Shown piece by piece: positions 6,136 to 53,288 of a stretch of 64,000 nucleotides of DNA. The translations under genes were made by a program, and so were the position numbers. The first letter of the stretch is position 1. Each line of letters begins with the position of its first letter. A model generated the notes under the pieces. The model worked only from the letters and a program-made list of their open reading frames with translations, made no database searches and had not been told where the DNA came from. Source of the DNA: Entomortierella parvispora E1425 (lineage: Eukaryota; Fungi; Mortierellomycota); the NCBI GenBank assembly GCA_020891255.1, contig BQFW01000011.1:310001-374000 (forward strand), read 5' to 3'.

Positions 6136-6443
6136 TGTTGATGGCCAGGTCGGTACGATACACCCTTAAGTAGAACCACTATATGTAGTTGCTCGCACGG
6201 CGTGGCCCTCTGCTCTGTATCCGTCTTATTCCACATTGATCGATACTGACAGAGGCCAGCACGGCGACACTTAGGTAGAGCAGCCCTCTCATTATTTATT
6301 ATTATCAATACATGATCCGTCTTATTCCACATTGATCGATACTGACAGAGGCCAGCACGGCGACACTTAGTCTGATTCTCACTCGTCACCTAGGATTGCC
6401 ATATCCCGCACAGCGCCCCTCAAGCCTGCCCCCGTACGCAACA
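6136..6443 (+). repeat. 5' LTR containing an internal 56-bp direct repeat (6219-6274 and 6315-6370)
   Basis: Base-by-base identical to 11513-11820; TG...CA ends. Confidence 0.97.
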
Positions 6444-6449
6444 GTCTTT

Positions 6450-6467
6450 TGGTGATCTACGCAGGGG
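6450..6467 (+). promoter_or_regulatory. Putative primer-binding site TGGTGATCTACGCAGGGG
   Basis: Begins with TGG (complement of tRNA CCA) 6 nt after the 5' LTR. The cognate tRNA would end ...CCTGCGTAGATCACCA; it is not one of the two tRNAs in this window. Confidence 0.5.
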
Positions 6468-6479
6468 GGGGAAGTGACG

Positions 6480-8336
6480 ATGGTGAAAACAGATTTGTTA
6501 AAGGCGTTGACCGATGAGATCCCGAGGTGGCCCATAGCCAACAAGAAGGGAACCGAAGCTTCCGCTCGAGCATGGATCCGCGAGCTAGGAGACTTTTGGG
6601 CCGACGAAGGATTTTCGTTCCAGCTGTATGTGGTTCGGAGTAAGTTAGACGACCCCACGAAGAGTTGGTTAGCATGGTGGAGACACGCTGTCCCCGAGAA
6701 TGAACAGAACTGGACCAAGTTAGTAAAGGATTTCGCGCAAGAACATGTCCAGGAACGTACCCCCGCCACGACCAAAGCAGAGATTATGAGAATGACCCAA
6801 GGTGACAAAGAGCCTTCGGACGACTACGTTAAACGGTTGGAGCTGAAGTTAGCAATGCTGCCGAAGGACGAGGATGGGAAATACAAACTGAGTCCAGATG
6901 AAGAGGAGATGATCGCCCTTCAGTTTTGTACCGGTCTCCATCGCGATCACAAGTTCAAGACGAGGAACACAGAGCCATCCAAGACTATTGCCGAAACGAT
7001 CAAGAATGTATCCAAGCTGGGAGAGATCAACCGCTGGGAGGACGTTCCCGACAGGCAGCGTGAGCTGAGAGATAGGAACTGGTCGGAAGAGACTCCAAGT
7101 CAAGGAGACAATATTTTGTTGGGTACCACGTCGGTATCGCGACCGCAGTTCGCTCGCTTCAAGAACGATTTCGGGAAAGAAGTTATCAACAATGCATCAG
7201 ATATTGACGACTTGGTCAAGTTGTTTGGGGCCTGGACAATCACTGACTTCACCGAAACCAAGCCAGAGAACCGAGTTACTGAAGCGATCAAGCGGCTCGA
7301 TGTCAACGTTGCCCGAAGAGTACTTCACAACACTTCGTTATCGAGGCATGTGTCGTTGGCGAACATCCCGCCGCCGCCCGCGCCTCCCATACAAGGAAAC
7401 CCGAACAGTGGAGCGGCTGTTGTCCCGGGGGGGTCTTATCCACCTTGCCCCGAATGCAACCAGATGGGACATGGGCGAGCCCGTTGCCCGCGAGCGGAAT
7501 GTCGCAATTGTGGCCAGCTGGGTCACATTTCGTACAATTGTCCAAATAACAGAGTGAACACAACGGTAGCACAAACTGAGCCGAATTCGAGAGCAGAGCA
7601 AGATTCGTCGAGGCGAGTTCGAGTTGTTAATGGAGACGGAGCCACTAGTGCTCTTGTGGCCACGAGAGCAATGGGTCGAACAGCGCCAGCCTCAGGGCCA
7701 CTGCAGAGAAATAGAGCAGATCGTAGCAGTGTGCCAACAGGGATAGGATCTCAGAGGAGAGCCGAGACCACAGGGATAGCACCACCAATTCGAAGGATGG
7801 ATGTTGAACCGGAGGCCGAACAAGAACAAACTCAGGAGGTACCCCAGCCACTGAGGAAGTTAAAGGTCAAGGAGATTGCCGCAATGAAGTTGAGGAAGGT
7901 TCGCATTCCTGTTGTGCCAGACCCCGAAATCATACGACAAGTCGAAGAGTTAGAATTCGACCCTGAGATCGTGGACAAGCACCGAGGAAGGATGGCCCCA
8001 CAATTAAAAGGCCGCCATAGGAGCGATTTGGACAGAGCGACGAGACAAACGCAAGGCTCCCAAGGAAAAGCGAGGAGTAACGTTCGCGAATCGCGCCAGT
8101 GTTCAACCGGGAGACCAGGTTACTGCATGGATAGGCAACCACCGGTTGGACAACTGCATCGTCGACCCAGGCAACGAGAAGACCATGATTTCAGAGCATG
8201 CTGCCAAGCAAGTCGGTCTGGAAGTGCGTGCCACCGTAAACCAGATCAGACAGGCCGACGGGGTACCCATTCCCTTGGTGGGCACTACTGGACAATTTAC
8301 GTTCTCGGTAGCTGGCACCGAGGTAGAGATGGGTAG
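6480..8336 (+). CDS. Retrotransposon Gag with two CCHC zinc knuckles
   Basis: ATG 6480; CPECNQMGHGRARC and CRNCGQLGHISYNC (CX2CX4HX4C). The meaningful reading probably shifts to the +1 frame near 8007. Confidence 0.85.
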   Translation: MVKTDLLKALTDEIPRWPIANKKGTEASARAWIRELGDFWADEGFSFQLYVVRSKLDDPTKSWLAWWRHAVPENEQNWTKLVKDFAQEHVQERTPATTKAEIMRMTQGDKEPSDDYVKRLELKLAMLPKDEDGKYKLSPDEEEMIALQFCTGLHRDHKFKTRNTEPSKTIAETIKNVSKLGEINRWEDVPDRQRELRDRNWSEETPSQGDNILLGTTSVSRPQFARFKNDFGKEVINNASDIDDLVKLFGAWTITDFTETKPENRVTEAIKRLDVNVARRVLHNTSLSRHVSLANIPPPPAPPIQGNPNSGAAVVPGGSYPPCPECNQMGHGRARCPRAECRNCGQLGHISYNCPNNRVNTTVAQTEPNSRAEQDSSRRVRVVNGDGATSALVATRAMGRTAPASGPLQRNRADRSSVPTGIGSQRRAETTGIAPPIRRMDVEPEAEQEQTQEVPQPLRKLKVKEIAAMKLRKVRIPVVPDPEIIRQVEELEFDPEIVDKHRGRMAPQLKGRHRSDLDRATRQTQGSQGKARSNVRESRQCSTGRPGYCMDRQPPVGQLHRRPRQREDHDFRACCQASRSGSACHRKPDQTGRRGTHSLGGHYWTIYVLGSWHRGRDG

Positions 8337-9321
8337 AGGAATGAACGTCATTGACTGCCAGCGATCGTACGATATGTTGCTTGGTGATGATTGGTTGAAA
8401 GCTGTCCGGGCGAAAGGGAAGTGGACCAGCAACGCTGTGGCCTACTACGTCACTCGGAATGGCAAGAAGGTCAAGCTAGGAATCGATCCCACTTTCGAGA
8501 GTAGCGATGACTCTATCACTGATGACTCCAGTAGCGAGGACGACGACAATATTTTTCCGGTCTTTGACGAAGACGACGAGGTCGAGCAGGCCCGCTCGTT
8601 TCGAGTCCAGGAAGTCCAAGTCGAGGGCAATGGAGAGATAGACGTCGTGAGGGACAATAAAGCCGCAACCGTTTCTCAGTACACCATTGGAGGGCACCCA
8701 ATCGATATCAACCCGGAGTTATCCCCTGAACAGCACAGTGAGGTTGTCGCACTATTAGAGCGCAACAAAGACCGATTCACGATGGATTTGAGCGAGTTGG
8801 AGGTCACCGACGTGCTCGAGCATGAGATTAATGTCAAGCCAGGAGCAAAACCAGTATATGTAGCCGGGTGCAGACGGTACGCGCCAAAAGAAAAAGAATA
8901 CCTGAAGAAGAATCTCGACGAGGAACTGAAGGCTGGCAAGATCATTCCTATGGAGTCGGAGTGGTGTGCACCCTTGTCCTTCGCACCAAAAGAAAGACGG
9001 CAACATTCGGAAGTGCGTCGCGTATATCGGATTGAACAAAGTGACAGAGCGAGAAAGCTGGCCACTACCCAATATCGAGGAGATCTTGGACGAGTTAGCC
9101 GGATTCAACTACTACACAGGGTTGGATGGATTTCAAGGGTACTACGTCATCGGCATCAAAAAGGACCACGTCAAGTACCTAGGATTCAGGACACCGTTTG
9201 GGACATACGCCTACAAAGTGCTTCCGTTCGGGTTGAAGAACGCTCCGCACACGTTCAGCAGATTCGTAGCCAAAGTGTATGCGGACTTAATTGGCCGGGT
9301 CATGAATGCTTATATGGATGA
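8008..9321 (+). CDS. Retrotransposon aspartic protease plus the N-terminal part of RT (+1 frame relative to gag)
   Basis: Frame open from 8008 (after TAA 8005). Protease-like CIVDPGNEKTMIS and YDMLLGDDWL; RT start HEINVKPGAKPV...SEWCAPLSFAPK to about 8991. Confidence 0.8.
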   Translation, partial: KAAIGAIWTERRDKRKAPKEKRGVTFANRASVQPGDQVTAWIGNHRLDNCIVDPGNEKTMISEHAAKQVGLEVRATVNQIRQADGVPIPLVGTTGQFTFSVAGTEVEMGRGMNVIDCQRSYDMLLGDDWLKAVRAKGKWTSNAVAYYVTRNGKKVKLGIDPTFESSDDSITDDSSSEDDDNIFPVFDEDDEVEQARSFRVQEVQVEGNGEIDVVRDNKAATVSQYTIGGHPIDINPELSPEQHSEVVALLERNKDRFTMDLSELEVTDVLEHEINVKPGAKPVYVAGCRRYAPKEKEYLKKNLDEELKAGKIIPMESEWCAPLSFAPKERRQHSEVRRVYRIEQSDRARKLATTQYRGDLGRVSRIQLLHRVGWISRVLRHRHQKGPRQVPRIQDTVWDIRLQSASVRVEERSAHVQQIRSQSVCGLNWPGHECLYG

Positions 9322-11479
9322 CGTGTGTGCGCGGACCAAAACGTGGGCCGAGCACCTCGACGCTTTGGAGTCTGTGTTTGCAGCTGCTCGTAAGGCTGGA
9401 GTCAAGTATAAGACCAGCAAGGCGCACATCGGTTACCCCAAGGTTACGTTCACTGGACACGTTGTTGGAGCAGGAGGGATCGAAGTCATGGCTGAGAAGG
9501 TCGACAAAATCCTGAATTTCGAACCGTTGGATAGCAAGGAAGCCGTCCGATCGTTTCTAGGGCTGACAGGGTATTATCGACGATTCGTAGAGAACTACGC
9601 CATGGTCGCCGAGCCACTCACGAAATTGCTGCGGAAGACCGCCAAATTCGTGTGGGAAGCAACACAGCAGGCTGCCATGCGGGAGTTACAGAAGAGACTG
9701 ACCGAAGCACCGTTACTGAAGCAGCCAGAGTTCGAGAAGGATTGGTTCGTATTCGTAGACGCTTGTGTTTACGCCATCGGAGGTGCGCTCGAACAGCGAG
9801 ACGGAGATGGACAGCTGCGACCTGTTTATTTCTACAGCAAGACCCTACAAGGAGCCGAGAGGAACTACGGTACATTCGAGCAAGAGTGTCTGGCCATTGT
9901 GTACTGCGTTAAGAAGTTCAGACCATACATTTTGGGCCGACAGACCACTGTGTATTCCGACCACGCTCCTCTGGCATGGTTATTCTCGAAAAGCGATCTG
10001 ACTGGAAGACCCGCTCGATGGCAGATGATTCTATCCGAGTTTGATCTGGTTGTAAAGACGCGACCAGGGGCGAAGAACGGCAACGCAGACGGAATGAGTC
10101 GAGTCCGGGTGCGTCCCGGAAAAGATAGCGACGACATCGACGATGAAATCCCGGACCCTTTTTGTTTTCGAGTCGTTGTGGTGGAAGACAAGTGGGCCGT
10201 GAGTCCATGGTACCGCAACACCTATACGTATCTGGCGACTGGTACACTCGTGTTAGAAGACGCTGCGGAAGCGAGAAGAGTGAAGCGCAACGCCTACCGC
10301 TATCGGATTGATGACGCCGGACGGTTGTTGTATCGAGATGCAGACCATGTGGACAAGCAGTGTGCACTTGCGGACGATATCGACGACATTCTCGCCAGGG
10401 CTCATGATATCGGAGGGCACTACGGCGCTGAAGCGACGCTTGCAACCATTCGGACTAACACATGGTGGCCAACGATGAGGGCGGACGTATTCCATTGGGT
10501 CAAGTCGTGCAAACAGTGCCAGCGATTTGGAACGAGAGCGAAGAACAATGAGCTGCGACCGACTGAGGCTGAGTTTCCGTTCGAAGTGATTTTCATCGAT
10601 TTGATCGAGGAATTGCCTATCACTGATCGAGGGATGACGGCCGTTGTTGTAGTGGTGGACTCATTCACCAAGTGGGTTGAAGCATGGCCCATCAGAGATA
10701 AGACGGCTGGGAGTGTTACCACGATTTTGTTCCAGCGCATCCTTTGCAGATTTGGTATGCCTGTCGCGATCCGAACAGATGGTGGTCCAGCGTTCAGGAC
10801 CGGGTTCAAAACGATGTGTGAGATGTTTGACATCCAACACTTGGTTGGATCCACAAGACACCCGCAGAGTCAGGGGCAGGTGGAAGCGATGAATAAGCAG
10901 CTGGAAGAGAGGCTGAGACGCGCACTGATCCCAGGAGTACCGCAGAACCAGTGGGATCAATATTTGCCAAAGGCTGTGTCCGACATCAATAACCATGTTG
11001 TGGCCGCAACAGGAATGTCCCCGATGCAAGCGCTGATGGGATACATTGGGCAGTCGGCATTGAAACGACACCTGGCGCAACAATGGCAAGAGGCAGCTCC
11101 CATTGCTGAGCAGTTGACTGAAGAGCAAGAGGTGATGGCCCGATTTGTCTGTCAACGAGAAGGCATCCGAGAACACGCGTATCAGAACCGTCTCAAGGCT
11201 AACGAGCGGATGAAGAGGTACTACGACCTAAAGGTTCGACCTGTTTCCTTTGAGGTTGGAGAACAAGTATGGGTGTATAACCTATCTGTCATCTCGGGAA
11301 TTGGCCGCAAGTTGACACCACGTTGGTTGGGGCCATTCGAGGTGGCATGGGTAGGCAAGAAAGGGTCCTACGGCGTGCGCACAGGAAGACAGCATTATGG
11401 TACTATTAATGGTGTTGAAAAATTGAATGGAGATATGTTAAAGAAGGTGGTGGAAAGAAGAGCGCCTTGGAAGATGTGA
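8990..11479 (+). CDS. Retrotransposon Pol: RT, RNase H, integrase (+1 frame relative to the protease ORF)
   Basis: RT LDGFQGY, LPFGLKNAP, YMDD; RNase H FVDAC, EQECLAI, YSDHAPL; integrase H-H-C-C zinc finger, FIDL / TDGG / QVE catalytic triad, WLGPF. Confidence 0.95.
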   Translation, partial: KKDGNIRKCVAYIGLNKVTERESWPLPNIEEILDELAGFNYYTGLDGFQGYYVIGIKKDHVKYLGFRTPFGTYAYKVLPFGLKNAPHTFSRFVAKVYADLIGRVMNAYMDDVCARTKTWAEHLDALESVFAAARKAGVKYKTSKAHIGYPKVTFTGHVVGAGGIEVMAEKVDKILNFEPLDSKEAVRSFLGLTGYYRRFVENYAMVAEPLTKLLRKTAKFVWEATQQAAMRELQKRLTEAPLLKQPEFEKDWFVFVDACVYAIGGALEQRDGDGQLRPVYFYSKTLQGAERNYGTFEQECLAIVYCVKKFRPYILGRQTTVYSDHAPLAWLFSKSDLTGRPARWQMILSEFDLVVKTRPGAKNGNADGMSRVRVRPGKDSDDIDDEIPDPFCFRVVVVEDKWAVSPWYRNTYTYLATGTLVLEDAAEARRVKRNAYRYRIDDAGRLLYRDADHVDKQCALADDIDDILARAHDIGGHYGAEATLATIRTNTWWPTMRADVFHWVKSCKQCQRFGTRAKNNELRPTEAEFPFEVIFIDLIEELPITDRGMTAVVVVVDSFTKWVEAWPIRDKTAGSVTTILFQRILCRFGMPVAIRTDGGPAFRTGFKTMCEMFDIQHLVGSTRHPQSQGQVEAMNKQLEERLRRALIPGVPQNQWDQYLPKAVSDINNHVVAATGMSPMQALMGYIGQSALKRHLAQQWQEAAPIAEQLTEEQEVMARFVCQREGIREHAYQNRLKANERMKRYYDLKVRPVSFEVGEQVWVYNLSVISGIGRKLTPRWLGPFEVAWVGKKGSYGVRTGRQHYGTINGVEKLNGDMLKKVVERRAPWKM

Positions 11480-11505
11480 CCTGCCAGAGGCCGGGTTCAC
11501 ATCTC

Positions 11506-11512
11506 GGGGGGG
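11506..11512 (+). promoter_or_regulatory. Putative polypurine tract (G7) abutting the 3' LTR
   Basis: GGGGGGG immediately before TGTTG at 11513. Confidence 0.5.
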
Positions 11513-11820
11513 TGTTGATGGCCAGGTCGGTACGATACACCCTTAAGTAGAACCACTATATGTAGTTGCTCGCACGGCGTGGCCCTCTGCTCTGTATCCG
11601 TCTTATTCCACATTGATCGATACTGACAGAGGCCAGCACGGCGACACTTAGGTAGAGCAGCCCTCTCATTATTTATTATTATCAATACATGATCCGTCTT
11701 ATTCCACATTGATCGATACTGACAGAGGCCAGCACGGCGACACTTAGTCTGATTCTCACTCGTCACCTAGGATTGCCATATCCCGCACAGCGCCCCTCAA
11801 GCCTGCCCCCGTACGCAACA
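11513..11820 (+). repeat. 3' LTR
   Basis: Identical to 6136-6443. Confidence 0.97.
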
Positions 11821-11980
11821 CCTTTTTGTCTCTGCACGTGACCTCGGAATCTGCGCCTTCGCTCGCATCCCACATCCCGAACAATGGCACCGATTGGCCT
11901 TCATTCAGATCACACGTCCCATTCCTTCCTTCCTTCCTTCCCTCCAACAATCCACCCTCACCCTCCACAGCTGCTGCACC

Positions 11981-12606
11981 ATGCCCGTCAAGTCCAACAA
12001 CGCCACTGCGGCCAACAAGTTTGCTCGCCTCGGATACAACACCATCGTCAAGCGCAACTCGATCTTCCTCACCACCATCTTTGTCACCGCCTTTGCCGCC
12101 GAGATGGCCTTTGACTCGGTCTCGGACCGCATCTGGGACAACATCAACAAGGGTGTACGTTCTCTTCAGCCTGTTCCTCCTTCCCCCCTCCTTTCTTTGC
12201 TTCTCATCCTAGACCGCATGAAGGATGAATCCCTGGATCATGGAATGACAGAGATTAGACGTTGCAGCAGTACACAACAAATGGAGCCCCCACTCCTCCC
12301 TTGCCTTGCGAAACGCTGATCTTGACCTGACACTTGTTGACCCAATAACTCAAGCGATGGCCTGCAGGAGTTGACCTTTTCCTTATCGCCACTGGATGCG
12401 GATCTACAGAACTTCAATCTCTGCTATCCCTTGTCTTGCGTAACAACGCGTCAGGGCATTAGCCAAAAAACAGGGACACCCGCTGTGATCTCCTGGCTTA
12501 CAAGCTCAATTGTATCATCCAACTAACTCTCCTTTCACTGCATGTTCTTTCCTCTCATTTATAGCGCCAGTGGAAGGACATTGCCCACAAGTACGAAGAT
12601 AACTAA
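11981..12606 (+). CDS. QCR9: Cytochrome b-c1 complex subunit 9
   Basis: Exon 11981-12154 (YNTIVKRNSIFLTTIFVTAFAAEMAFDSVSDRIWDNINKG), GT-AG intron 12155-12564, exon 12565-12606 (RQWKDIAHKYEDN*), giving the NKGRQWKDI signature. Confidence 0.9.
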
Positions 12607-13864
12607 ATGCCTTTTAGGCTACTATCGACCATTCATTCACTCTCCACGACTTGGTATTCAATAAAATAATCTCCTAAATCAAAAAAACTCCCTCGTTGCC
12701 TCAAGGCAATATCCTTATTGGATAATACAGTTGCGTGGACTAGCATAGAAGAATCTGGTAAATCTTCCTCCGCATGCAGAAGGATACTATAATACTATAC
12801 CCACCAACTTGAATATGCTTCTGCTTCAGGTTCTCAATCGATAGGCGAAGCTCTTGTGGCTTGAAGTGGACTGCGATTTCTTCTAGTGAGGGTCTTGGAT
12901 ATGGCCGTTGCACAGGGTACTCTTTCCTGATTTTGGCAGGATATTCCGTTTGGTGACAGGTTACCCCACCTTGGCCTTATGCGTCGCGTTGGACCTGCAG
13001 TTATTTCATAATCAAGTAGGGCCAAGGACAGTGGGTACATGACACATTTGGAAGAGGGCTACTTCTTTCACAGAGGACTCGCCTTCTGTTGTTATATAAA
13101 TCTAGTGTTTGTTATTTGACTGCAACCGCGGAACTAGAGAAAATGATGTCTATAGCAATCTTCTTAAGCCCAATTCAGACTGATGCCGAATCTTCAGGCT
13201 GGAGGCTGAACAAGGAAAGCGTCAAGGTAACCGGTTCTTTGATATTGTCCAAGGTTCAAAAGAAACGGATGACCACAGAAGTCTTTTATTGGTTCTGGAA
13301 TCACGGTAAAGACTTTAACCTGTTTAGTTGAGTATTACGGAGCTCTTATACAAGTTCCAAATAGCTACTTGAAGCGCACATCTCCACAAACACTCCTGTA
13401 AAATTCAAATTCAAAAAAACCTGTTCAACACGCGACCATTTCTTTTTGGGGGGTCGGACAAAAGTGTGCCGCCGTCGGGGGGATCTTCCCTCTTTTTGCA
13501 AATAACGTTGGAGGCAGAAGTCAACAAAAACCTGTTGGAAAGCAACAACGGTTGATCTTTTTTTTTTTTTTTTTGTCTCCACATTGAAAACCCATTGTTG
13601 ACCTGAACTTTAGCAGCGACCGGTATTCAAACAGATACCTCTCAGACCATTCCATGACCCTCAGTTGTTGCTCTTCTCCTCATAACTATCTATCCCTCCC
13701 CACTTTTCATTTTTTCGCCCAGCACAATCCTTCATCCCCTCCCTTGTCCTCTCTCTTCTTCTCTTCCCTTTTCCAACTATCTTCACCTCTCCACTCTTCA
13801 CGTCTTCATCTGTCTTTTCTACTCTCTTTCTCTTCCCGCGACTTTCTTTGTTGCCACCCCTGAA

Positions 13865-15759
13865 ATGTAAGCGTCAAAGAATACGTCGTAGAAACTACAC
13901 TAACGGCCAGAGAATCAACTGTCTCATGCATTTTTCCCCTTTCCCCCAAAAGGATCATTCAACGGACCCGACACGCGCTTTTGTCACACAGGCCAACCAC
14001 GCCTCTTCTCCAGTCATCCTCGATCAGCAAAGCTTATGGTCTCCCCTTCAACCTCCGCGCCGTCACCCGTGCCGCCCAGACTCTGGCGGCCAGGGCCGAA
14101 AAACAGCACTCTAATGAATTTGACGTCGTGATCGTCGGTTCTGGAGCTGCAGGCATGACGGCCGCCTTGGCCGCCAAGAAGCGGGGTCTTAACGTCGTGG
14201 TCATTGAAAAGTCCCGGTATTTTGGTGGCTCGACCGCTCGCTCCGGAGGCGCGATCTGGGTGCCCAACAACTCTGTTATCTTGGGAGCTGGTGTCCCAGA
14301 TTCGGCCGAACAGGCCGCAACCTACCTATCTAACGTGGTCGGACCAGAGATCCCCAAGGACCGTCAGCAGGCTTTTCTTGAGCATGGACCCAAGATGATT
14401 GACTTTATCATGGACAATACTCCGTTGCGTTTCCAATTCTTGGAAAACTACAGTGACTACTACCCTCACTTTCCTGGTGGCCTTGATATTGGTCGCTCGA
14501 TCGAGGCTATTCAAGTTGATGCCAATCTCCTGGGTGCTGAAAAGGAAAGGCTCAACCCGCCCTACATGCCCATGCCCCCCGGCATCGTTATGTACAGTGC
14601 TGACTACAAGTGGGTCAACTTGGCTGGGGTCAACGTAAAGGGTCTTGCCACCGGCATCAAGTGTATGTTGGCTGGTCTTAGAGCCATGGCTCTCCGTCAG
14701 AACCCCCAGACCATGGGTGCAGGTCTTGCAGTTGGTCTTCGTCTCGGTCTAATGGACGCCAAAATCCCTGTCTGGCACAACACTCCCTTGCTCGACCTGG
14801 TCCAAGATGGTGATGCCATATCTGGCGTGGTCGTCGAAATGCACGGCGTTCGCACCACGATCCGCGCCAAGAAAGGTGTCGTTATTGGTTCAGGTGGATT
14901 CGAACAAAATGCAGAGATGCGCAACAAGTATCAGCAGCAGCCTATCAACACAAAGTGGACTGTTGGATCCAAGGACAACACTGGTGATGGTATCTGGGCT
15001 AGCGAGAAGGTTGGTGCCGCTCTCGATCTAATGGACGATTCCTGGTGGGGTCCTACCGTCCCTGTCCCTGGTCAGCCCTACTTTTGTCTCTCGGAACGTG
15101 CTCTTCCCGGAGGATTGTTTGTGAACAAGCACGGCAAGCGCTTCGTTAATGAGGCGGGGCCATACTGTGAAGTGGTCCATGTTATGTATGAGCAGGACAA
15201 GAGTGATGATGGCAGTGAGATCCCTACGTGGATGATTGTTGATCAAAGATTCCGCAACAGATATCTCTTCAAGGACGTGCCTGGCAGGTTCCCCATCCCC
15301 AAGTTCTGGTATGAGTCCGGCGTGGTCAAGAAAGCCAAGACCCTGCATGAACTAGCCAAAGATATCAATGTCCCAGCAGATGCTCTGCAAGCCACCGTGA
15401 CACGATTCAACGGACAAGCCAAGAAGGGCGTCGACGAGGACTTTGGCCGCGGTAACAACATGTATGACAGATTCTATACCGATCCTGCAGTCAAGCCCAA
15501 CCCATGCTTGGCTCCTCTTGAACAGGGCCCATTTTACGCGTTCAAGATTGCCCCGGGTGACCTTGGTACCAAAGGTGGTATTGTAACCGATGCTAGGGCC
15601 AGGGCCTTGCGCTCTGATGGCACGGTGATCAAGGGTCTATGGGCTGCAGGAAACGCAAGTGCTGCAGTCATGGGTAACAGCTACGCCGGCGCCGGATCTA
15701 CAATTGGACCTGCCATGACCTTTGGTTACATTGCCGCGAATGATCTCGCAGATTTGTAA
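13865..15759 (+). CDS. kstD: FAD-dependent 3-ketosteroid-delta1-dehydrogenase-like flavoprotein of bacterial type, with an N-terminal extension
   Basis: Rossmann motif DVVIVGSGAAG, GGSTARSGGAIWVPNN, YSDYYP, SWWGP, FVNEAGPY, PGDLGTKGG, SYAGAGSTIGPAMTFG. Modelled as AT(13865-66), intron 13867-13991, G(13992)...TAA 15759, 589 aa. Substrate not demonstrated. Confidence 0.8.
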
Positions 15760-17440
15760 AATAAACATTACTTCAAAATCAGCACGATTTGTCGTTCGTT
15801 TGTGGAGATACGAATTTATGACAAAGAAGATCCAAAAAAAAAAAAAAAAAAAAAAAGCCGCATGGCGAACCAAAGACTATAAAATGAGAGGCACCTGTTG
15901 CCACATTCCATCATCACTCCTTAGTCCTTATTACAAAGATTTCTCTCTGTGCTCTCACTCAGCCTTGAAGCCCTGCGTCATACTCGGCCCCGCTTCTCTG
16001 GTTCCAGCACATACACCTCTAGGCTCTGTCGAATAGGGGAAGTGGCCACGACATTAATGAGCATCTGTCTCTGGACCTAACACCGAACATTATCGATTTG
16101 AAACTGCTAACTACCTGCGCTCGATTCTTTGGTACAAAATGTTTGCGAGAGAGCAGTTACGCTGGGCGTAGGAAAAGGTCTTTGGAGATGAACATGTTGC
16201 GATCGAAAACTTTCGTCATAGAGCTCAAAGTGATAGACAGATAGTTGGCAACAGATACCTGGGCAGCACTACATGTCTAAAAAGAAATGCGTGAGCGCCG
16301 ACGAGTAAAGCTGCAGGAATCTTTCGGTGTATTTCAAGCGCACCATGCGGATACCTTTTGGTCAGAAGGATGTCTTTTAAAGTCAACTAATGGCGCAGCA
16401 TTGGATTTACAGGCAGCAGCAGCAGCATCCCAGTCACGGAAAGGATATTCTAAACTGTCTTGGAAGAGCATTGTTTATCGAGATAGTGTGCCTATTTCTG
16501 AAGGAATATCTGTCGCCAAGGGCTTGGGACGAAATCCTAGAACGCAACGCATGTTACTGGTCTCTACATAACTTTTCAGAGGGCTGAATAGTGTTGTCCT
16601 TATTGAAGGCTAGGTGGGTTCTTCATATGAGGCTACTGCCCATCTTTAAAGGGAAGAGACAGAGAGAGCAAAGGATACAAAGGAGTGCATTTGGAAAATG
16701 GCGAATTTCGCACTCAGGCCCAGAAATAACTCTGAATTTTTTTTTATTCTTCGAGTCTTCGATCTCTTGGTTCTGTAAAGATGATGGGGGTGCCCTGCCC
16801 TGAAGCCAAGATTCATCTTGCGCAAATAACGCATAACGGTGATAGTAGAACTCCAGAGGTCCCAGGCCTTCTAATCTAGTTGGTGCTTACAGGATGGCAT
16901 CCTCCACGGTCGTCATGATTGAGTCGGTAGATATCATTAATCTAGTCTTTCCTAGTCAGATCCCGTTCCCTCGGTGTAATCGTTCGTCTCTTTGCTGTGA
17001 TGTTTCTGCCCAACATGGTCGTACTTCTACTCCCTTTCTTCTGGCTGGGATCAGGCCATCCGAAGGTGTGAAGTCCGCTGGAGCTTGTGGAGCTCGTCAC
17101 TTCGTGGGACTGATGTTCCTCCCTTCTTCTTCCTCAGTCATGAATTCTGGAATCTCGTTGAGACGACTGGCTTCTGAAACGCTTGCTCTTCCTCTTTGTC
17201 AAATGTTTGCATCATGGCGCCTCAACGGCCTTCGAACTACTTGTTAGTGAAGGCTGTCGTGAATCTTTTCTATCAGTTGCACAAAAGTTTTGAAGACGGA
17301 GAAACCATCGGGTGAGTCCTTGCTTACACACCTACTGATATACCGAGAGCGAAAGGGCGTTTTTTTTTTCTCGCCCTAGAGGCCTCACTTGCGCGTCCAA
17401 AAGCTGCATTGAGGCAAAAGAAAAAAAAATAAAAATAGAA

Positions 17441-17465
17441 TGCGACCTGTGTGGATTGAACACAC

Positions 17466-17506
<41 letters not shown>

Positions 17507-17513
17507 AGGTCGC
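17441..17513 (-). tRNA. tRNA-Phe(GAA), intronless
   Basis: GCGACCT/AGGTCGC acceptor stem, GCTC/GAGC D stem, TCAGA-CTGAAGA-TCTGA anticodon arm, GTGTG-TTCAATC-CACAC T arm; T-rich run downstream. Confidence 0.96.
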
Positions 17514-18096
17514 AGATAGAGAATAAGAATTGCAGATCAGTATTATGTCACAAAACACCAAATCACGTGACTCGACTTTCACGTGATATAATGTATGTAT
17601 TTGGTGGCGCAACGCAGCATGAACCTTGCCAAAAAAAGCCCAGCTTTTCCTGTCGTTCTGTTTTTATGATAATTGTTGGCGTTGATGGCGGAGGACAAAA
17701 AGGCACAGAAGTCTCATTGAGCCCCTCGTTTGCCCGTTCGCCCACCCTTGGCTCCGTCGCGCCTTTGCCCGGGATAACTATTCTTAGAGGATTGCTTTGC
17801 GCCCGGAACTCACACGACCCGACAGACTGCTGCTTTTTCCATGTGTTCGTCCCTCTTGACACACACGACCAATTGCTCCACACAACTCAGCAGCAAAACA
17901 GCCACGACTGCTCCAGCAAACATAAAAACCCCTGCTTGCACCCTCCTCCTCCATTCGTCTCCCTCATCCTCGTCTTCATCCTCATCCTCATCCTTCATTT
18001 CGCCCCCTCTTTCACCTCGTTCTTTCTTCACTCTTTTAATCCTCTTCAATCGCTTAATGACCCATATCAGTCAAGAATAATTCGCCAAAACCCATA

Positions 18097-20148
18097 ATGA
18101 AATTCGTTTGCATACTCGCCCTGGCAGCTGTCGCCCAAGCAGCCCAGATTACCTTTCGCGTTGTCGCGCCTGGCGCCACTTCGGTCAGCGTCCTGGTCAA
18201 TGGCCAGCAAACTGCTCTGTCTGCCGCAGATCCCACTGTCCCTTACTTCACTGGTGTCGCGGAGACAGGTTCTGATTCCAAATACAAGTACCAGGCTGGA
18301 GGCGTGGCCGAAACCTTTGATCGTCCTTTGCCTGCAGGCCGTACAAGTACTCTGAACGACTTCATCAACCGTCCCGTTACCTATGCAGATATCCCCGAGC
18401 TGCCCTGGCCCATCGAAAAGGATGTAAGTGAACTTGGCGACGACAAGAAGCAGAAACCAAAAAAATCAAGGGGGAGGCAGCTTTCGCTGGACAACGGTGG
18501 GTCGTGGCCCCGCAATATGCTAACAAAGCCTTCTCTCCTTCCATCTCCTGCGGTTCTCTCCTTCCATCTCCTGCTGTTCTCTCCTTTTCTTTTTACTCTT
18601 CCTCAGCCCCAATGGACTCGCTCGGGGCCCAAGCAGCCCTTGTTTGATACAAACTACATCCCTACGATTTTCGTCAACGGTGATGTGAGCCAATTGGATG
18701 CCCTCATTGCTAACCCTGTCAAGACTAAGTACCCTGTTACTCTGACTTATATCCTGGCTGACGAGACAAAGACTTTCACTGTGAGTTTCAGACCGAGTAT
18801 CACTGACTGCCAACTCCTGTCCAGCAGCTAACCCTCGCCCCCTTTTTTTGGTTTTGTTAATTGATCCCCTTAGAACGTTAGCTTTGGTATCCACGGAGCT
18901 GGCAAGAAAAAAAACAACTCTAAGCAAAGCTGGAACTGGCAGCTCAACGCCGGCGACACCTACCAGGAGCGCAGTTTCTTCAAGATTCGGCACCAAGAAG
19001 AGGATCCAACCCAAATCCGCGAAAAACTCTATGCCGATATTAGTCGAGCCATGGGCACCTACGCCAATGAGGCAGTCATGGTCCGCTTGTTCATTAACGG
19101 CGATGGGTTTGGAACTTTCAACCTCTTGGATGATGTTACCCAATACTCCTATCCATCGGCAATGTTCTATGCCGGCAAGCCTCCAGCTCAAATGGGTGGT
19201 CTCTTTGATGGCGCTTCCGGTGCGAGCTTCCAATACTCGGCTACGGGCGACTACTATTCGTGGATCCAGAACCCTGCAAGTCCTGACGAACCCTCAGCTA
19301 TTGGACCTTTCTGCGAGCTTTGGAGCAAGACTGACAAGACCAATGATGCAGCCATCGCGACTGTTAACCAGCAGTTGGATTTGGATTCATTTGTGCGTTT
19401 CATGGTTCTCGAATACCTGACTGGTAACTGGGACGGTTACTGGGAGGGTCAGACTAACGATGGTCTTTACCGAGACACCACTCAAAACAACAAGTGGTAC
19501 TACCTTGCCCAAGATTTCGATGCCACTTTTGGCGTCAACTTGCCCTCCGAGGACCCCACATTTGTAACTTGGTCTTATACCAAGTTCCCTGCCGCGTACC
19601 CAGGTGCCGTCTTGATCAACGGTCTCTTGCAGAACCCAACCTACCAAAAGACCTTTGAATCGTACCTCAAGAATACTGTTCAAGTCTTGTTCAACAACGT
19701 TACGCTCTCCAACCGAATCCTCAAGTACCACGAGTTTATCTTGCCAGATCTCGCATGGGATCGCAACATTACCCAGAGATCTCCTGGTATTGACTTCCAT
19801 TGGACTCTTGCTCAAGCGACTGCGAACCTCTACGAGGGTGTTGTCGCTGGAGGTACGGCCCCTGGCGGCGCCGGTTTCGGTCTGCTTGAATGGATCAGCA
19901 AGAAAGCTGATGCTGTTGCCAAAGAGTTTTCAATCACTATTACCTCAACCCCTGTCGGCCCCCCCTCAGTTGCTAACGGAAATAAGCCTTCAGCCTCAGC
20001 CACTGGACCAACTACGCCAACTGCTACTGGACCTGGTAGCGGTGGTCGCGGTGACACGGTTGCTAACGCCGCAGTGTTGCTGTCCCCAGGTGCATTGACC
20101 TCGATCGTCTTGGTCGGTGCTTCCATTGGTGTTTCTTTGATGATGTAA
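18097..20148 (+). CDS. cotH: CotH-family secreted kinase/invasin-like protein with signal peptide and GPI-type tail
   Basis: Exons 18097-18423, 18607-18780 and 18874-20148 are in frame. Signal peptide MKFVCILALAAVAQA; FGIHGAGKKKNN..KQSW, FFKIRH.EEDPTQIREKLY, NWDGYW, GQTNDG; S/T/G/P-rich stalk and hydrophobic C-terminus. Confidence 0.9.
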
Positions 20149-52637: not shown

Positions 52638-52866
52638 GGATGGATTTTTTTGACGTAAGATAATTAAAAGATTTTTGAAATCAGGGATTATGTATTATCA
52701 AGACGCAAACTTGGCTGTTTGCGGCCACGATGTACCACCTCATATTCCCCCCATTCGACATTGCTGTGCACTTTGTCCTGCCAGTTCATGATCATCTTCG
52801 CTCGAATCCACAAAACTTCATCTCCAGCATTCAAAAGAAATAAAACACTCGGTGAAGTAAGCAAAA

Positions 52867-52939
52867 TGTTCCCGGCCGGGTTCGAACCAGCGATCTTCAC
52901 TTAGTAAGAGTGACGCGCTAACCACTACGCTACGAGAAC
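52867..52939 (-). tRNA. tRNA-Val(TAC), intronless, with atypical U37
   Basis: GTTCTCG/CGGGAAC acceptor stem, A73, TCACT-CTTACTA-AGTGA anticodon arm, GCTGG-TTCGAAC-CCGGC T arm; TTTT terminator directly after. Confidence 0.9.
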
Positions 52940-53288
52940 ACATCCATATCTTGAGTCAGAAAAGATATAATTTGTTGAACCTAACGGATTCTGATCACGT
53001 GATACTGATACCCGTGATCACGATTTGTGGTTAGGGTCAGGGCTGTCCACACGCCGAGGGTCAGGGCTGTCCACAAAGGACGGGGGACCAGGCCAGATAA
53101 TAAGCCCCGTACCCGAGGGACCTTTGACAAGAAAAAAAAAGGGGGCAGGTGGGACCGCTGTGGTAAGCCAATTGACGCGATACTGTATTCAGTCAGTTTC
53201 CTTTGACAGTGAAGAGAAAAAAAAAAAAAAAAAAAAAAAAGAGGTCACATGAGCAACGTGCGTGAGAGCATCTTTCTCCATCACATTA

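What the first reader, a model, noticed from the sequence alone, without database searches (positions are those of the whole stretch)
13865..15759. Bacterial-type steroid delta1-dehydrogenase (KstD-like) gene apparently domesticated in a fungus
Seen: 1768 bp of intronless coding sequence among intron-rich neighbours, with host-like GC. Established: the motif set (GGSTARSGG..W.PNN, DYYP..PGG, WWGP, NE..PY, GDLGTKGG, Y.G.G.TIGPAMTFG) is that of actinobacterial 3-ketosteroid-delta1-dehydrogenases, and the Tyr residues expected to be catalytic appear retained (DYY, GPY, SYAGAG). Inference: an old horizontal transfer from Actinobacteria that may give a soil fungus steroid A-ring dehydrogenation for sterol catabolism or detoxification.
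Basis: partly seen in the sequence, partly recalled or inferred. Interest (0 to 1): 0.75.

Follow-up and report, generated by a model that had tools for sequence, protein, structure and literature searches.

The report
Streptomyces-type steroid dehydrogenase gene in Mortierellaceae
A soil fungus of the Mortierella family carries an intact, host-adapted gene for a bacterial steroid ring-A desaturase (KstD). Its ancestors took it from Streptomyces-like bacteria, and the bacterial export signal has been replaced by a fungal, mitochondrion-like leader.

Summary
Window 13864-15759 (+) is one open frame of 631 codons. It scores 844.5 bits on NCBIfam's equivalog model for 3-oxosteroid 1-dehydrogenase (cut-off 788). 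It keeps the FAD loop GSGAAG and all four catalytic positions of Rhodococcus KstD1.

The gene sits in a fungal chromosome between QCR9 with a young Gypsy element and tRNA-Phe. It is single-copy in the 38.9-Mb assembly, and its GC3 is 0.59, against 0.48-0.58 in host genes and 0.94 in actinomycete homologues.

Horizontal transfer is supported and can be stated more precisely:
- Orthologues at 65-80% identity occur across Mortierellaceae genera and form one clade (100/100).
- That clade lies inside a clade of actinomycete KstDs (Streptomyces, Lentzea, Nonomuraea) at 61-67% identity. All of these carry a twin-arginine export signal.
- An AU test does not quite reject plain sister placement (p 0.086).
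- No other eukaryote appeared among close relatives.

So the transfer is old and family-wide, not specific to this genome.

The fungal gene replaced the Tat signal with a basic, acid-free N-extension. It probably starts at an ATG split by an 86-nt intron.

Enzyme activity, substrate and location are inferred. I found no paper on this transfer. Other reports of this scan describe further bacterial imports in the same genome.

The parts
13660..13860 (+). Pyrimidine-rich (CT) tract upstream of the first ATG; presumed core promoter / 5' leader
   Evidence: Read directly. The only upstream ATG (13654) opens a frame that stops at 13861. No bacterial promoter signal above chance.
13865..13866 (+). 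Last two bases (AT) of exon 1: first two bases of a start codon split by an intron (predicted)
   Evidence: ATG at 13865-67 is followed by TAA if unspliced. The G at 13867 begins GTAAGC, a standard fungal 5' splice site.
13867..13952 (+). Predicted 86-nt spliceosomal intron: GTAAGC ... CTAAC (13900-13904) ... T5C4T3C5 tract (13931-13947) ... AAAAG
   Evidence: Splicing joins AT to G13953 in the KstD frame and gives M-IIQRTRHALL. This is the same start position as the Podila verticillata orthologue, MNLPRTRHAF. Its length and 5' site resemble an RPB2 intron in this window. No RNA evidence. An alternative acceptor at 13990-91 (a 125-nt intron) is also in frame.
13953..15759 (+). Exon 2: G of the start codon, 601 codons and TAA. 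Predicted product 602 aa
   Evidence: AATAAA follows the stop directly at 15760-15765.
13953..14115 (+). N-terminal extension (about 55 residues) in place of the bacterial Tat signal: basic, Ser/Thr/Ala-rich, no acidic residue in the first 48, net charge +7; mitochondrial-presequence-like
   Evidence: The conserved core LP(L/F)xFRxxRxAQxLA is shared with other Mortierellaceae orthologues. The close bacterial homologues have SRRxVLAG-type twin-arginine signals instead.
14116..15756 (+). KstD catalytic body (FAD_binding_2), intronless
   Evidence: NF005882 matches residues 46-589 of the ORF over profile positions 1-547 of 547. Full-length alignment to AcmB (PDB 7P18), 426 bits.
14137..14154 (+). 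Dinucleotide-binding loop GSGAAG (FAD)
   Evidence: Invariant in alignment A1. The existing public gene call (P0001, 534 aa) starts after this loop and is therefore truncated.
14458..14460 (+). Tyr aligned with KstD1 Y119
15163..15165 (+). Tyr aligned with KstD1 Y318 (the catalytic base in KstD1)
15682..15684 (+). Tyr aligned with KstD1 Y487
15694..15696 (+). Gly aligned with KstD1 G491

Best explanation
This is a functional nuclear gene for an FAD-dependent 3-ketosteroid delta1-dehydrogenase (KstD, EC 1.3.99.4).

Shown:
- An ancestor of the Mortierellaceae acquired it once from an actinomycete carrying the Tat-exported KstD subtype now found in Streptomyces, Lentzea and Nonomuraea. It has been inherited vertically since.
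- It has been fully adapted to the host: host-like codon composition, fungal flanks, and loss of the twin-arginine signal.

Inferred:
- A new start is built from an intron-split ATG, followed by a basic, acid-free leader of about 55 residues.
- The enzyme removes the 1-alpha and 2-beta hydrogens of 3-keto steroids. The Tyr aligned with KstD1 Y318 acts as base, hydride goes to FAD, and the two other Tyr and the Gly backbone polarise the C3 carbonyl.
- The leader sends the protein to mitochondria, where reduced FAD could be re-oxidised through the quinone pool, as membrane-associated bacterial KstDs use the respiratory chain.
- It most likely modifies or detoxifies exogenous 3-keto steroids or steroidal plant and fungal compounds in soil. 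It is unlikely to feed a full ring-degradation pathway, for which I found no other parts.
For: Family membership:
- NF005882 equivalog, 844.5 bits against a cut-off of 788.
- FAD_binding_2 matched end to end.
- 426 bits full-length to AcmB (7P18), and all four KstD1 catalytic positions aligned.
- Those positions are kept in all full-length fungal orthologues apart from an alignment gap at the Y318-equivalent position in the 551-aa model P0014. They are missing in the degenerate copy P0123.
- The Atlas model has TM 0.99 to bacterial KstD clusters.

Origin:
- Hits after Mortierellaceae (65-80% identity) go straight to Streptomyces at 62-67%, and to Nonomuraea and Lentzea at 61-63%.
- The rest of the protein universe is at 52% or less.
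- Careful tree: fungi 100/100; fungi plus Streptomyces subclade A 100/100; the whole Tat-type clade 100/100 with a stem of 0.46.

Integration and age:
- Single copy on a 2.1-Mb contig of a 20-contig assembly.
- Flanked by QCR9, a Gypsy element with identical LTRs, and tRNA-Phe.
- GC3 0.587 against 0.94 in actinomycetes. RSCU correlation is 0.64 with host exons and 0.30 with the Nonomuraea homologue.

Purifying selection: 16 crown orthologues are intact, with 44% of columns invariant.

Signal swap: 88 of 101 bacterial top hits carry an RR motif and the rest are truncated gene calls. The fungal N-extension has net charge +7 and no acidic residue in its first 48 positions.
Against: - No enzyme assay, RNA or proteomic evidence exists.
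- The start-codon and intron model rests on sequence logic and one orthologue's annotated start.
- Most orthologue models start later (MGCF...), so the length of the leader is uncertain.
- The amphipathic-helix score of the leader is not above shuffles (13.5% of shuffles reach it), and no targeting predictor was available.
- The AU test does not reject fungi as plain sister of all Tat-type bacterial KstDs (p 0.086), so 'nested within Streptomyces' is not proven.
- The KstD superfamily includes enzymes for non-steroid cyclic ketones (for example the ChcC1/ChcC2 models, which score far below cut-off here).
- No partner genes for steroid uptake or further degradation were found. There is no VAO-type cholesterol oxidase domain, although that search had a silent control. 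Bergstrand et al. 2016 found no fungal steroid-nucleus degraders.
- The neighbourhood of the Nonomuraea homologue is not a steroid cluster.
Confidence: 0.72

Rival explanations
1. The gene is a real, conserved import, but the enzyme no longer acts on steroids, or never mainly did. It would desaturate another cyclic ketone or enone precursor in the fungus, for example a terpenoid or another alicyclic 3-oxo compound.
For: The KstD-like superfamily holds non-steroid desaturases, as the ChcC1/ChcC2 families show. The Tat-exported actinomycete subclade has no characterised member that I could find. Its Nonomuraea neighbourhood is not a steroid cluster. No other steroid-catabolic genes were seen in the fungus.
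Against: The score exceeds the curated equivalog cut-off for 3-oxosteroid 1-dehydrogenase, while the non-steroid family models score below half of their cut-offs. The full catalytic tetrad is kept. Characterised KstDs are broadly promiscuous for 3-ketosteroids (abstract of PMC8220720).
Confidence: 0.18
2. Bacterial contamination or a chimeric join in the assembly.
For: The coding body is intronless and is 62-67% identical to Streptomyces proteins.
Against: - GC3 is 0.587 against 0.94 in actinomycetes.
- The gene lies in the middle of a 2.1-Mb contig, between QCR9 with a Gypsy element and a tRNA.
- Orthologues occur in at least 15 independently assembled Mortierellaceae genomes.
- There is no in-frame ATG before the FAD loop, no Tat signal, and no bacterial promoter signal above chance.
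Confidence: 0.01
3. An ancient eukaryotic gene inherited vertically and lost in all other fungi, or a gene that passed from fungus to Streptomyces.
For: The fungal clade is monophyletic, and the AU test leaves room for it to be sister to, rather than inside, the Tat-type bacterial clade.
Against: Successive outgroups are all actinobacterial or other bacteria: Rhodococcus, Nocardioides, Immundisolibacter, Verrucomicrobia. No other eukaryote appears among hits at 62% identity or more, or among the named cluster representatives. 65% identity to Streptomyces is far too high for a divergence at the root of cellular life. Bootstrap support places the fungi inside Streptomyces.
Confidence: 0.03
4. 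A decaying relic with no present function in this species.
For: The ancestral start codon position reads AGG here (13951-53), where Podila verticillata has its Met. The existing gene call is truncated. A degenerate second copy exists in Podila clonocystis (P0123).
Against: 631 codons are open with no stop or frameshift. All catalytic and FAD-binding residues are intact, and the end branch is short at 0.10-0.11. A clean splice solution restores an ATG in frame.
Confidence: 0.06

Closest known systems
Tat-exported 3-oxosteroid 1-dehydrogenases of Streptomyces (S. subrutilus, S. goshikiensis, S. virginiae, S. erythrochromogenes group), Lentzea and Nonomuraea (annotated, uncharacterised)
   Same: 61-67% identity over the whole catalytic body, the same length, the same catalytic tetrad, and sister or nested position in the tree.
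   Different: The bacterial proteins begin with a twin-arginine signal peptide such as SRRSVLAG, NRRQVLAG or TRRNLLKG. The fungal protein has an unrelated basic leader, host codon usage and probably a 5' intron.
Characterised bacterial KstDs: R. erythropolis KstD1 (PDB 4C3X/4C3Y) and Sterolibacterium AcmB (PDB 7P18)
   Same: FAD_binding_2 architecture, and the aligned Tyr/Tyr/Tyr/Gly catalytic positions. AcmB aligns end to end at 426 bits.
   Different: Roughly 40-45% identity by my reading of the printed alignments; no figure was reported by the tool. KstD1 lacks the insertion of about 50 residues between the two aligned blocks. Both are cytoplasmic or membrane-associated bacterial enzymes within steroid catabolic pathways.
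HelE, the 3-ketosteroid delta1-dehydrogenase of the helvolic acid (fusidane) cluster of Aspergillus fumigatus (PMC5696383)
   Same: A fungal KstD-family enzyme shown to introduce the C1-C2 double bond into a 3-keto triterpenoid.
   Different: HelE is an ascomycete gene inside a nine-gene biosynthetic cluster. The gene here has no cluster partners. The Atlas lists a separate Ascomycota-rich cluster, away from the nearest bacterial clusters. A direct tree with HelE was not made, because no sequence was available by reference.
Other bacterium-to-Mortierellaceae transfers (Ciach et al. 2024, PMC11291939; bacterial-like NRPS of M. alpina; ice-nucleating proteins, PMC12978214)
   Same: The same recipient lineage and the same kind of event. 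Ciach et al. name soil Actinomycetia as the second main donor group for Mortierellomycota.
   Different: This gene is not mentioned in that paper or in its two held supplements. No paper in the searchable library links Mortierellaceae with a KstD gene.

Membership tests
3-ketosteroid delta1-dehydrogenase (KstD, EC 1.3.99.4; NCBIfam NF005882 / PRK07843) | Full-length match to the curated equivalog model above its cut-off | tested here: met
   844.5 bits against a cut-off of 788, profile positions 1-547 of 547
3-ketosteroid delta1-dehydrogenase (KstD, EC 1.3.99.4; NCBIfam NF005882 / PRK07843) | N-terminal FAD dinucleotide-binding motif GxGxxG within a FAD_binding_2 domain | tested here: met
   GSGAAG at 14137-14154; PF00890 positions 1-414 of 414, E 5e-83
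3-ketosteroid delta1-dehydrogenase (KstD, EC 1.3.99.4; NCBIfam NF005882 / PRK07843) | Catalytic residues equivalent to Y119, Y318, Y487 and G491 of R. erythropolis KstD1 | tested here: met
   Aligned to Tyr codons at 14458, 15163 and 15682 and the Gly codon at 15694. The residue roles come from established KstD1 literature, which I recalled and did not re-read.
3-ketosteroid delta1-dehydrogenase (KstD, EC 1.3.99.4; NCBIfam NF005882 / PRK07843) | Fold of solved KstDs | tested here: met
   End-to-end sequence alignment to 7P18. The Atlas's own model (pTM 0.94) has TM 0.96-0.99 to bacterial KstD clusters. I made no model of my own.
3-ketosteroid delta1-dehydrogenase (KstD, EC 1.3.99.4; NCBIfam NF005882 / PRK07843) | 1,2-dehydrogenation of 3-ketosteroids in vitro or in vivo | not testable with these tools
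   Needs expression and an assay
Tat-exported actinomycete KstD subclade | Phylogenetic placement inside or next to the clade | tested here: met
   The union of fungi and Tat-type bacteria is supported 100/100, with a stem of 0.46. Nesting has 97-100 bootstrap support, but the AU p is 0.086.
Tat-exported actinomycete KstD subclade | Twin-arginine signal peptide | tested here: not met
   There is no RR-x-[FLV]-L motif or hydrophobic core in the fungal N-extension. 88 of 101 bacterial relatives have one.
HelE-type KstD of fusidane biosynthetic clusters | Location in a cluster with an oxidosqualene cyclase, P450s, an SDR and acyltransferases | tested here: not met
   The neighbours are QCR9, a Gypsy element, tRNA-Phe, CotH, a bZIP protein and a 2OG oxygenase about 14 kb away
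Interkingdom horizontal gene transfer (bacterium to fungus) | Strongly supported grouping with bacteria to the exclusion of other eukaryotes | tested here: met
   Only Mortierellaceae appear among the named eukaryotic hits.
Interkingdom horizontal gene transfer (bacterium to fungus) | Physical integration in host chromosome and host-like composition | tested here: met
Interkingdom horizontal gene transfer (bacterium to fungus) | Conserved synteny of the insertion site among recipient species | not testable with these tools
The metagenome scan returned no fungal orthologue loci.

The most novel reading that the evidence does not exclude
Mortierellaceae turned a bacterial extracytoplasmic (Tat-exported) steroid desaturase into a mitochondrial enzyme. 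The Tat signal was exchanged for a presequence. In this species the start was rebuilt from a start codon split by an intron whose acceptor (AG|G) arose by mutation of the ancestral ATG. This would wire steroid ring-A desaturation to the fungal respiratory chain. It would give a whole fungal family an unrecognised capacity to transform, and together with a Rieske KshA-like gene elsewhere in the genome perhaps to open, steroid nuclei. Comparative genomics has so far assigned that capacity only to Actinobacteria and Proteobacteria.
Probability: 0.15. Interest if true: 0.75.

Novelty: new member of a known kind. Interest (0 to 1): 0.5.

Why it matters
KstD is the key enzyme of microbial steroid ring-A desaturation and an industrial biocatalyst used to make prednisolone-type drugs and androstadienedione.

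Comparative genomics found no steroid-nucleus degradation pathway in fungi (PMC4810484). The only well-studied fungal KstD is a biosynthetic enzyme in ascomycete fusidane clusters.

A KstD of recent actinomycete type, conserved across a whole family of common soil and rhizosphere fungi, gives three things:
- a clean, datable case of bacterium-to-fungus transfer with a visible change of targeting signal (Tat to a eukaryotic leader) and probable intron gain;
- a testable lead for steroid or saponin-aglycone transformation by Mortierellaceae in soil;
- a eukaryote-adapted KstD that may express well in fungal or yeast hosts.

It also points to an uncharacterised, apparently exported KstD subclass in Streptomyces, Lentzea and Nonomuraea.

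Tried and rejected
The single metagenome scan returned only bacterial-type relatives at 56% identity or less.
- A careful tree of 59 rows did not finish in two runs. I used its quick tree and then a careful tree of 32 rows.
- My first AU test call was uninformative, because Streptomyces against fungi is already a bipartition. The proper constraint gave p 0.086.
- I looked for a steroid-catabolic context around the Nonomuraea homologue and found thiolase, an ABC transporter, a methyltransferase and an epimerase. That is not a recognisable steroid cluster. No Streptomyces locus was fetched.
- I first considered an acceptor at 13991 (a 125-nt intron). I now rank it below the 13952 acceptor, which has a pure pyrimidine tract and reproduces the orthologue's start position.
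- I considered that ATG 13926 (another frame) is the true start, hidden by a homopolymer assembly error. None of 169 homopolymer runs in 17 kb of long open frames is broken, which bounds this at about 7%.
- The fungal leader and the Streptomyces Tat signal showed no convincing similarity in alignment A1.
- Own-genome search for a VAO-type cholesterol oxidase domain gave no hit, but the control genomes were silent too, so this says little.
- Literature searches for Mortierella 1-dehydrogenation, for Tat-exported KstD, and for this transfer in Ciach et al. and its supplements found nothing specific.
Exon 2 was always used by reference. Only was a Met prefixed inside a script, to count charge and hydrophobic moment.
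Full report
WHAT IS THERE

Window 13864-15759 (+) is a single open frame of 631 codons ending in TAA. From 14116 onward it encodes a complete FAD_binding_2 protein (Pfam E 5e-83, profile 1-414 of 414). It scores 844.5 bits on NCBIfam NF005882, the equivalog model for 3-oxosteroid 1-dehydrogenase, whose cut-off is 788, with the profile covered 1-547 of 547. Related models for other FAD-dependent desaturases all fall far below their cut-offs.

Against solved structures, the best match is the KstD AcmB of Sterolibacterium (7P18), at 426 bits end to end. R. erythropolis KstD1 (4C3X) follows. After allowing for the 20-residue tag offset of the 4C3X chain, KstD1 residues Y119, Y318, Y487 and G491 align with Tyr codons at 14458, 15163 and 15682 and a Gly codon at 15694. 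The FAD loop GSGAAG lies at 14137-14154.

THE GENE IS PART OF A FUNGAL CHROMOSOME

- The window is positions 310001-374000 of contig 11 of a 38.9-Mb, 20-contig assembly, and the gene is single-copy there.
- Upstream lie a QCR9 exon (11894-12319) and a Gypsy retrotransposon with two identical 300-nt LTRs (6136-6435 and 11513-11812).
- Downstream lie tRNA-Phe (17440-17514, minus strand), CotH, a PAP1-type bZIP gene, GH31 and others.
- GC3 of the gene is 0.587. Host open frames in the window have 0.48-0.58, and the Nonomuraea and Lentzea homologues have 0.94. Codon-usage correlation is 0.64 with host exons and 0.30 with the Nonomuraea gene.
- The genome's two other FAD_binding_2 loci, presumably SdhA and a fumarate reductase, are interrupted by stops (introns). 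This one is not.

Contamination is therefore excluded for practical purposes.

RELATIVES AND ORIGIN

The word-index search lists Mortierellaceae proteins first, at 65-80% identity: Podila, Mortierella, Linnemannia, Haplosporangium and Gryganskiella. NCBI names most of them 'hypothetical protein'. Streptomyces '3-oxosteroid 1-dehydrogenase' follows directly at 62-67%. No other eukaryote is in the top 120.

A scan of GTDB species genomes adds Nonomuraea, Lentzea and actinomycete MAGs at 61-63%. Nocardioides and Rhodococcus follow at 51-53%.

The exhaustive search of 50%-identity cluster representatives shows how isolated this group is. The best full-length representative is 52% identical, a Rhodococcus opacus/jostii/koreensis KstD, and all others are at 46% or less. 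The named ones are bacterial. Shorter representatives at about 60% identity include a second, degenerate Podila clonocystis copy. The ESM Atlas lists bacterial KstD clusters as nearest, and a separate Ascomycota-rich cluster further away.

PHYLOGENY

- A quick tree of 95 rows and one of 59 rows gave the same picture as a careful IQ-TREE run (LG+C20+F+G4 by PMSF, 32 rows, N-terminal leaders trimmed).
- The fungal sequences are one clade (100/100).
- They group with one Streptomyces subclade (100/100), then with a second Streptomyces subclade (97/94), then with Lentzea (98/99).
- All of this lies inside a clade of actinomycete KstDs (100/100, stem 0.46 substitutions per site) that excludes Rhodococcus and Nocardioides KstDs.
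- An AU test of the alternative 'all these bacterial sequences form one clade and fungi lie outside it' costs 26.5 log-likelihood units but gives p 0.086. Nesting within Streptomyces is therefore likely but not proven. Sister placement to the whole bacterial subclade remains possible.
- Either way, all successive outgroups are bacterial, so the direction is bacterium to fungus.
- Within fungi the tree is largely coherent by genus, which fits vertical descent after one acquisition.
- There are two fungal lineages. A crown group includes this gene. A deeper group comprises Gryganskiella P0018, an unnamed P0017 and the degenerate Podila clonocystis P0123. 'Podila epigama' P0023 branches between them. 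This genome has only the crown type.

The clade is limited to one family and itself sits among actinomycetes.

WHAT CHANGED ON THE WAY: THE N-TERMINUS

All close bacterial relatives begin with a twin-arginine (Tat) signal peptide, for example SRRSVLAGTGAGVLAA...ARADG in Streptomyces, NRRQVLAGAGLALA...ASAD in Lentzea and TRRNLLKGAAITGG in Nonomuraea. 88 of 101 listed hits have the RR motif, and the other 13 are gene calls that begin inside the signal. The more distant Nocardioides and Rhodococcus KstDs have none. The donor type was therefore an exported, extracytoplasmic KstD. I found no literature on this subclass.

The fungal proteins lack this signal. They have instead an extension with a conserved core LP(L/F)xFRxxRxAQxLA.

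In the window, the KstD frame is open upstream to 13864. Its translation (..IIQRTRHALLSHRPTTPLLQSSSISKAYGLPFNLRAVTRAAQTLAARAEKQ..) aligns with the long N-termini annotated in Podila verticillata (MNLPRTRHAFALHRAIAPLR...) and Linnemannia zychae. The window has no in-frame ATG before the FAD loop. This is why the existing public gene call (P0001, 534 aa) starts at an internal Met behind GSGAAG and must be wrong.

The sequence offers a clean solution:
- The first ATG after the CT-rich leader (13865-67) overlaps a GTAAGC donor at 13867.
- A CTAAC branch-point-like motif lies at 13900-04.
- A pure pyrimidine tract (13931-47) is followed by AAAAG|G.
- Removing 13867-13952 (86 nt) joins AT to G13953 in frame. 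The product is M-IIQRTRHALL..., 602 aa, with its Met at exactly the position of the Podila verticillata Met.
- The window's AGG at 13951-53 occupies the orthologue's start-codon position. A change of the ancestral start codon to AGG may therefore have made the acceptor. This is inference.
- An RPB2 intron in the same window is of similar size and begins with GTAAG.

Other models are possible:
- An acceptor at 13991 is also in frame, but it has a weaker tract and removes conserved residues.
- ATG 13926, in another frame, would need an assembly indel. None of 169 homopolymer runs in 17 kb of long open frames is broken, so I put that at 7% or less.

I rate the 86-nt split-start model at about 55%, the 125-nt variant at 15%, and other solutions at 30%. 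No RNA data were available.

The leader has net charge +7 and no acidic residue in its first 48 positions. It is rich in Ser, Thr, Ala, Leu and Arg, the composition of a mitochondrial presequence. It has no hydrophobic core as a signal peptide would, and no C-terminal PTS1. Its best 18-residue helical hydrophobic moment (0.55) is not significantly above shuffles, since 13.5% of shuffles reach it. Mitochondrial import is therefore a reasonable inference at about 50%, not a result.

MECHANISM

Shown here: membership of the KstD family by curated model, catalytic residues and fold, and conservation of these residues in all full-length Mortierellaceae orthologues (the 551-aa model P0014 has an alignment gap at the Y318-equivalent position).

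From established KstD1 and AcmB work (recalled, not re-read): the Tyr equivalent to Y318 abstracts the 2-beta proton, hydride from C1 goes to FAD N5, and the other two Tyr and the Gly amide polarise the 3-keto group.

Inferred: the fungal enzyme does the same on 3-keto-4-ene or 5-alpha-3-keto steroids, and reduced FAD is re-oxidised via quinones. This would make sense at the mitochondrial inner membrane.

I found no evidence for a full degradation pathway. Bergstrand et al. found none in fungi (PMC4810484). There is no biosynthetic cluster around the gene. The only other steroid-flavoured hit in the genome is a two-exon Rieske/KshA_C gene on contig 2, whose origin I did not resolve.

The most likely role is transformation or detoxification of exogenous steroids or steroidal plant metabolites. 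S. virginiae, whose KstD is in the sister group, includes strain IBL14, described as an effective degrader of steroidal compounds (abstract of PMC3599690). I did not check that this strain carries the gene.

COMPARISON AND NOVELTY

KstDs are well known. Fungal KstD activity and one fungal KstD gene (HelE of the helvolic acid cluster; PMC5696383) are known. Bacterial imports into Mortierellomycota are known as a class, with Actinomycetia named as the second main donor group (PMC11291939). This particular gene is not mentioned there or in its held supplements. Only four papers in the library contain both 'Mortierell' and 'ketosteroid', and by their titles and abstracts none concerns such a gene.

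Other reports of this scan describe further bacterial imports in the same genome (GH105, an ATP-grasp enzyme, an amidotransferase). One of them names the organism Entomortierella parvispora. I did not verify the species. My data show only that it is a member of the Mortierellaceae whose KstD is 80% identical to the nearest public orthologue.

I file the finding as a new member of a known kind: a KstD in a new host lineage, reached by a well-supported transfer. The Tat-to-leader exchange and the probable split start codon are its most instructive details.

VERDICT

Observation: confirmed. Interpretation: supported and refined.

Confidence:
- bacterial (Streptomyces-type) origin and family-wide vertical inheritance, about 0.9;
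- KstD activity on steroids, about 0.65;
- split-start intron model, about 0.55;
- mitochondrial targeting, about 0.5.

Interest: 0.5.

Noticed in passing
window 6136-11812: Young Gypsy-type LTR retrotransposon with gag, zinc knuckle, RT, RNase H and integrase. Its two 300-nt LTRs (6136-6435 and 11513-11812) are 100% identical. It ends about 2 kb upstream of the KstD start. Its gag-pol is spread over three frames.
   Followed up: partly
window 11894-12319 (+), 17440-17514 (-), 52866-52940 (-): The immediate eukaryotic neighbours of the import are a QCR9 (cytochrome bc1 subunit 9) exon upstream and tRNA-Phe(GAA) downstream. A tRNA-Val(TAC) lies further on.
   Followed up: partly
L002 = G000:C2:1928689-1931931 (exons about 424-1152 and 1219-1788, +): A two-exon gene with an N-terminal hydrophobic stretch, a Rieske [2Fe-2S] domain and a KshA_C domain (44 bits). 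It is either a relative of 3-ketosteroid 9-alpha-hydroxylase or a Neverland/DAF-36-like sterol desaturase. Its origin (bacterial or eukaryotic) and any link to the KstD are unresolved.
   Followed up: partly
window 14155-15756 (public gene call P0001, 534 aa): The existing gene call for this locus, which the ESM Atlas also holds, starts at an internal Met after the GSGAAG FAD loop. It is therefore N-terminally truncated. Most orthologue models in other species start at a later Met (MGCF...) than the conserved open frame suggests.
   Followed up: yes
L003-L008, L022, L027 and proteins P0019-P0120: An apparently undescribed subclass of actinomycete KstDs (Streptomyces, Lentzea, Nonomuraea, MAGs) carries twin-arginine signal peptides. 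This implies export of a folded FAD enzyme and steroid desaturation outside the cytoplasm. Nocardioides and Rhodococcus relatives lack the signal.
   Followed up: partly
P0123 (Podila clonocystis KAG0012763.1) with P0017 and P0018: There is a second, deeper fungal KstD lineage without the N-extension. The Podila clonocystis copy lacks about 100 residues, including the catalytic Tyr, and has a frameshifted C-terminus. It is a pseudogene or a poor gene model, and it sits beside an intact crown-type copy (P0005) in the same species.
   Followed up: partly
window 15760-15860: AATAAA follows directly after the TAA stop, and an A run of about 23 bases lies about 75 nt downstream of the stop.
   Followed up: no
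window 18097-20148 (+): CotH-kinase-family coding sequence (Pfam CotH, E 7e-21). Several ORFs in different frames suggest introns.
   Followed up: no
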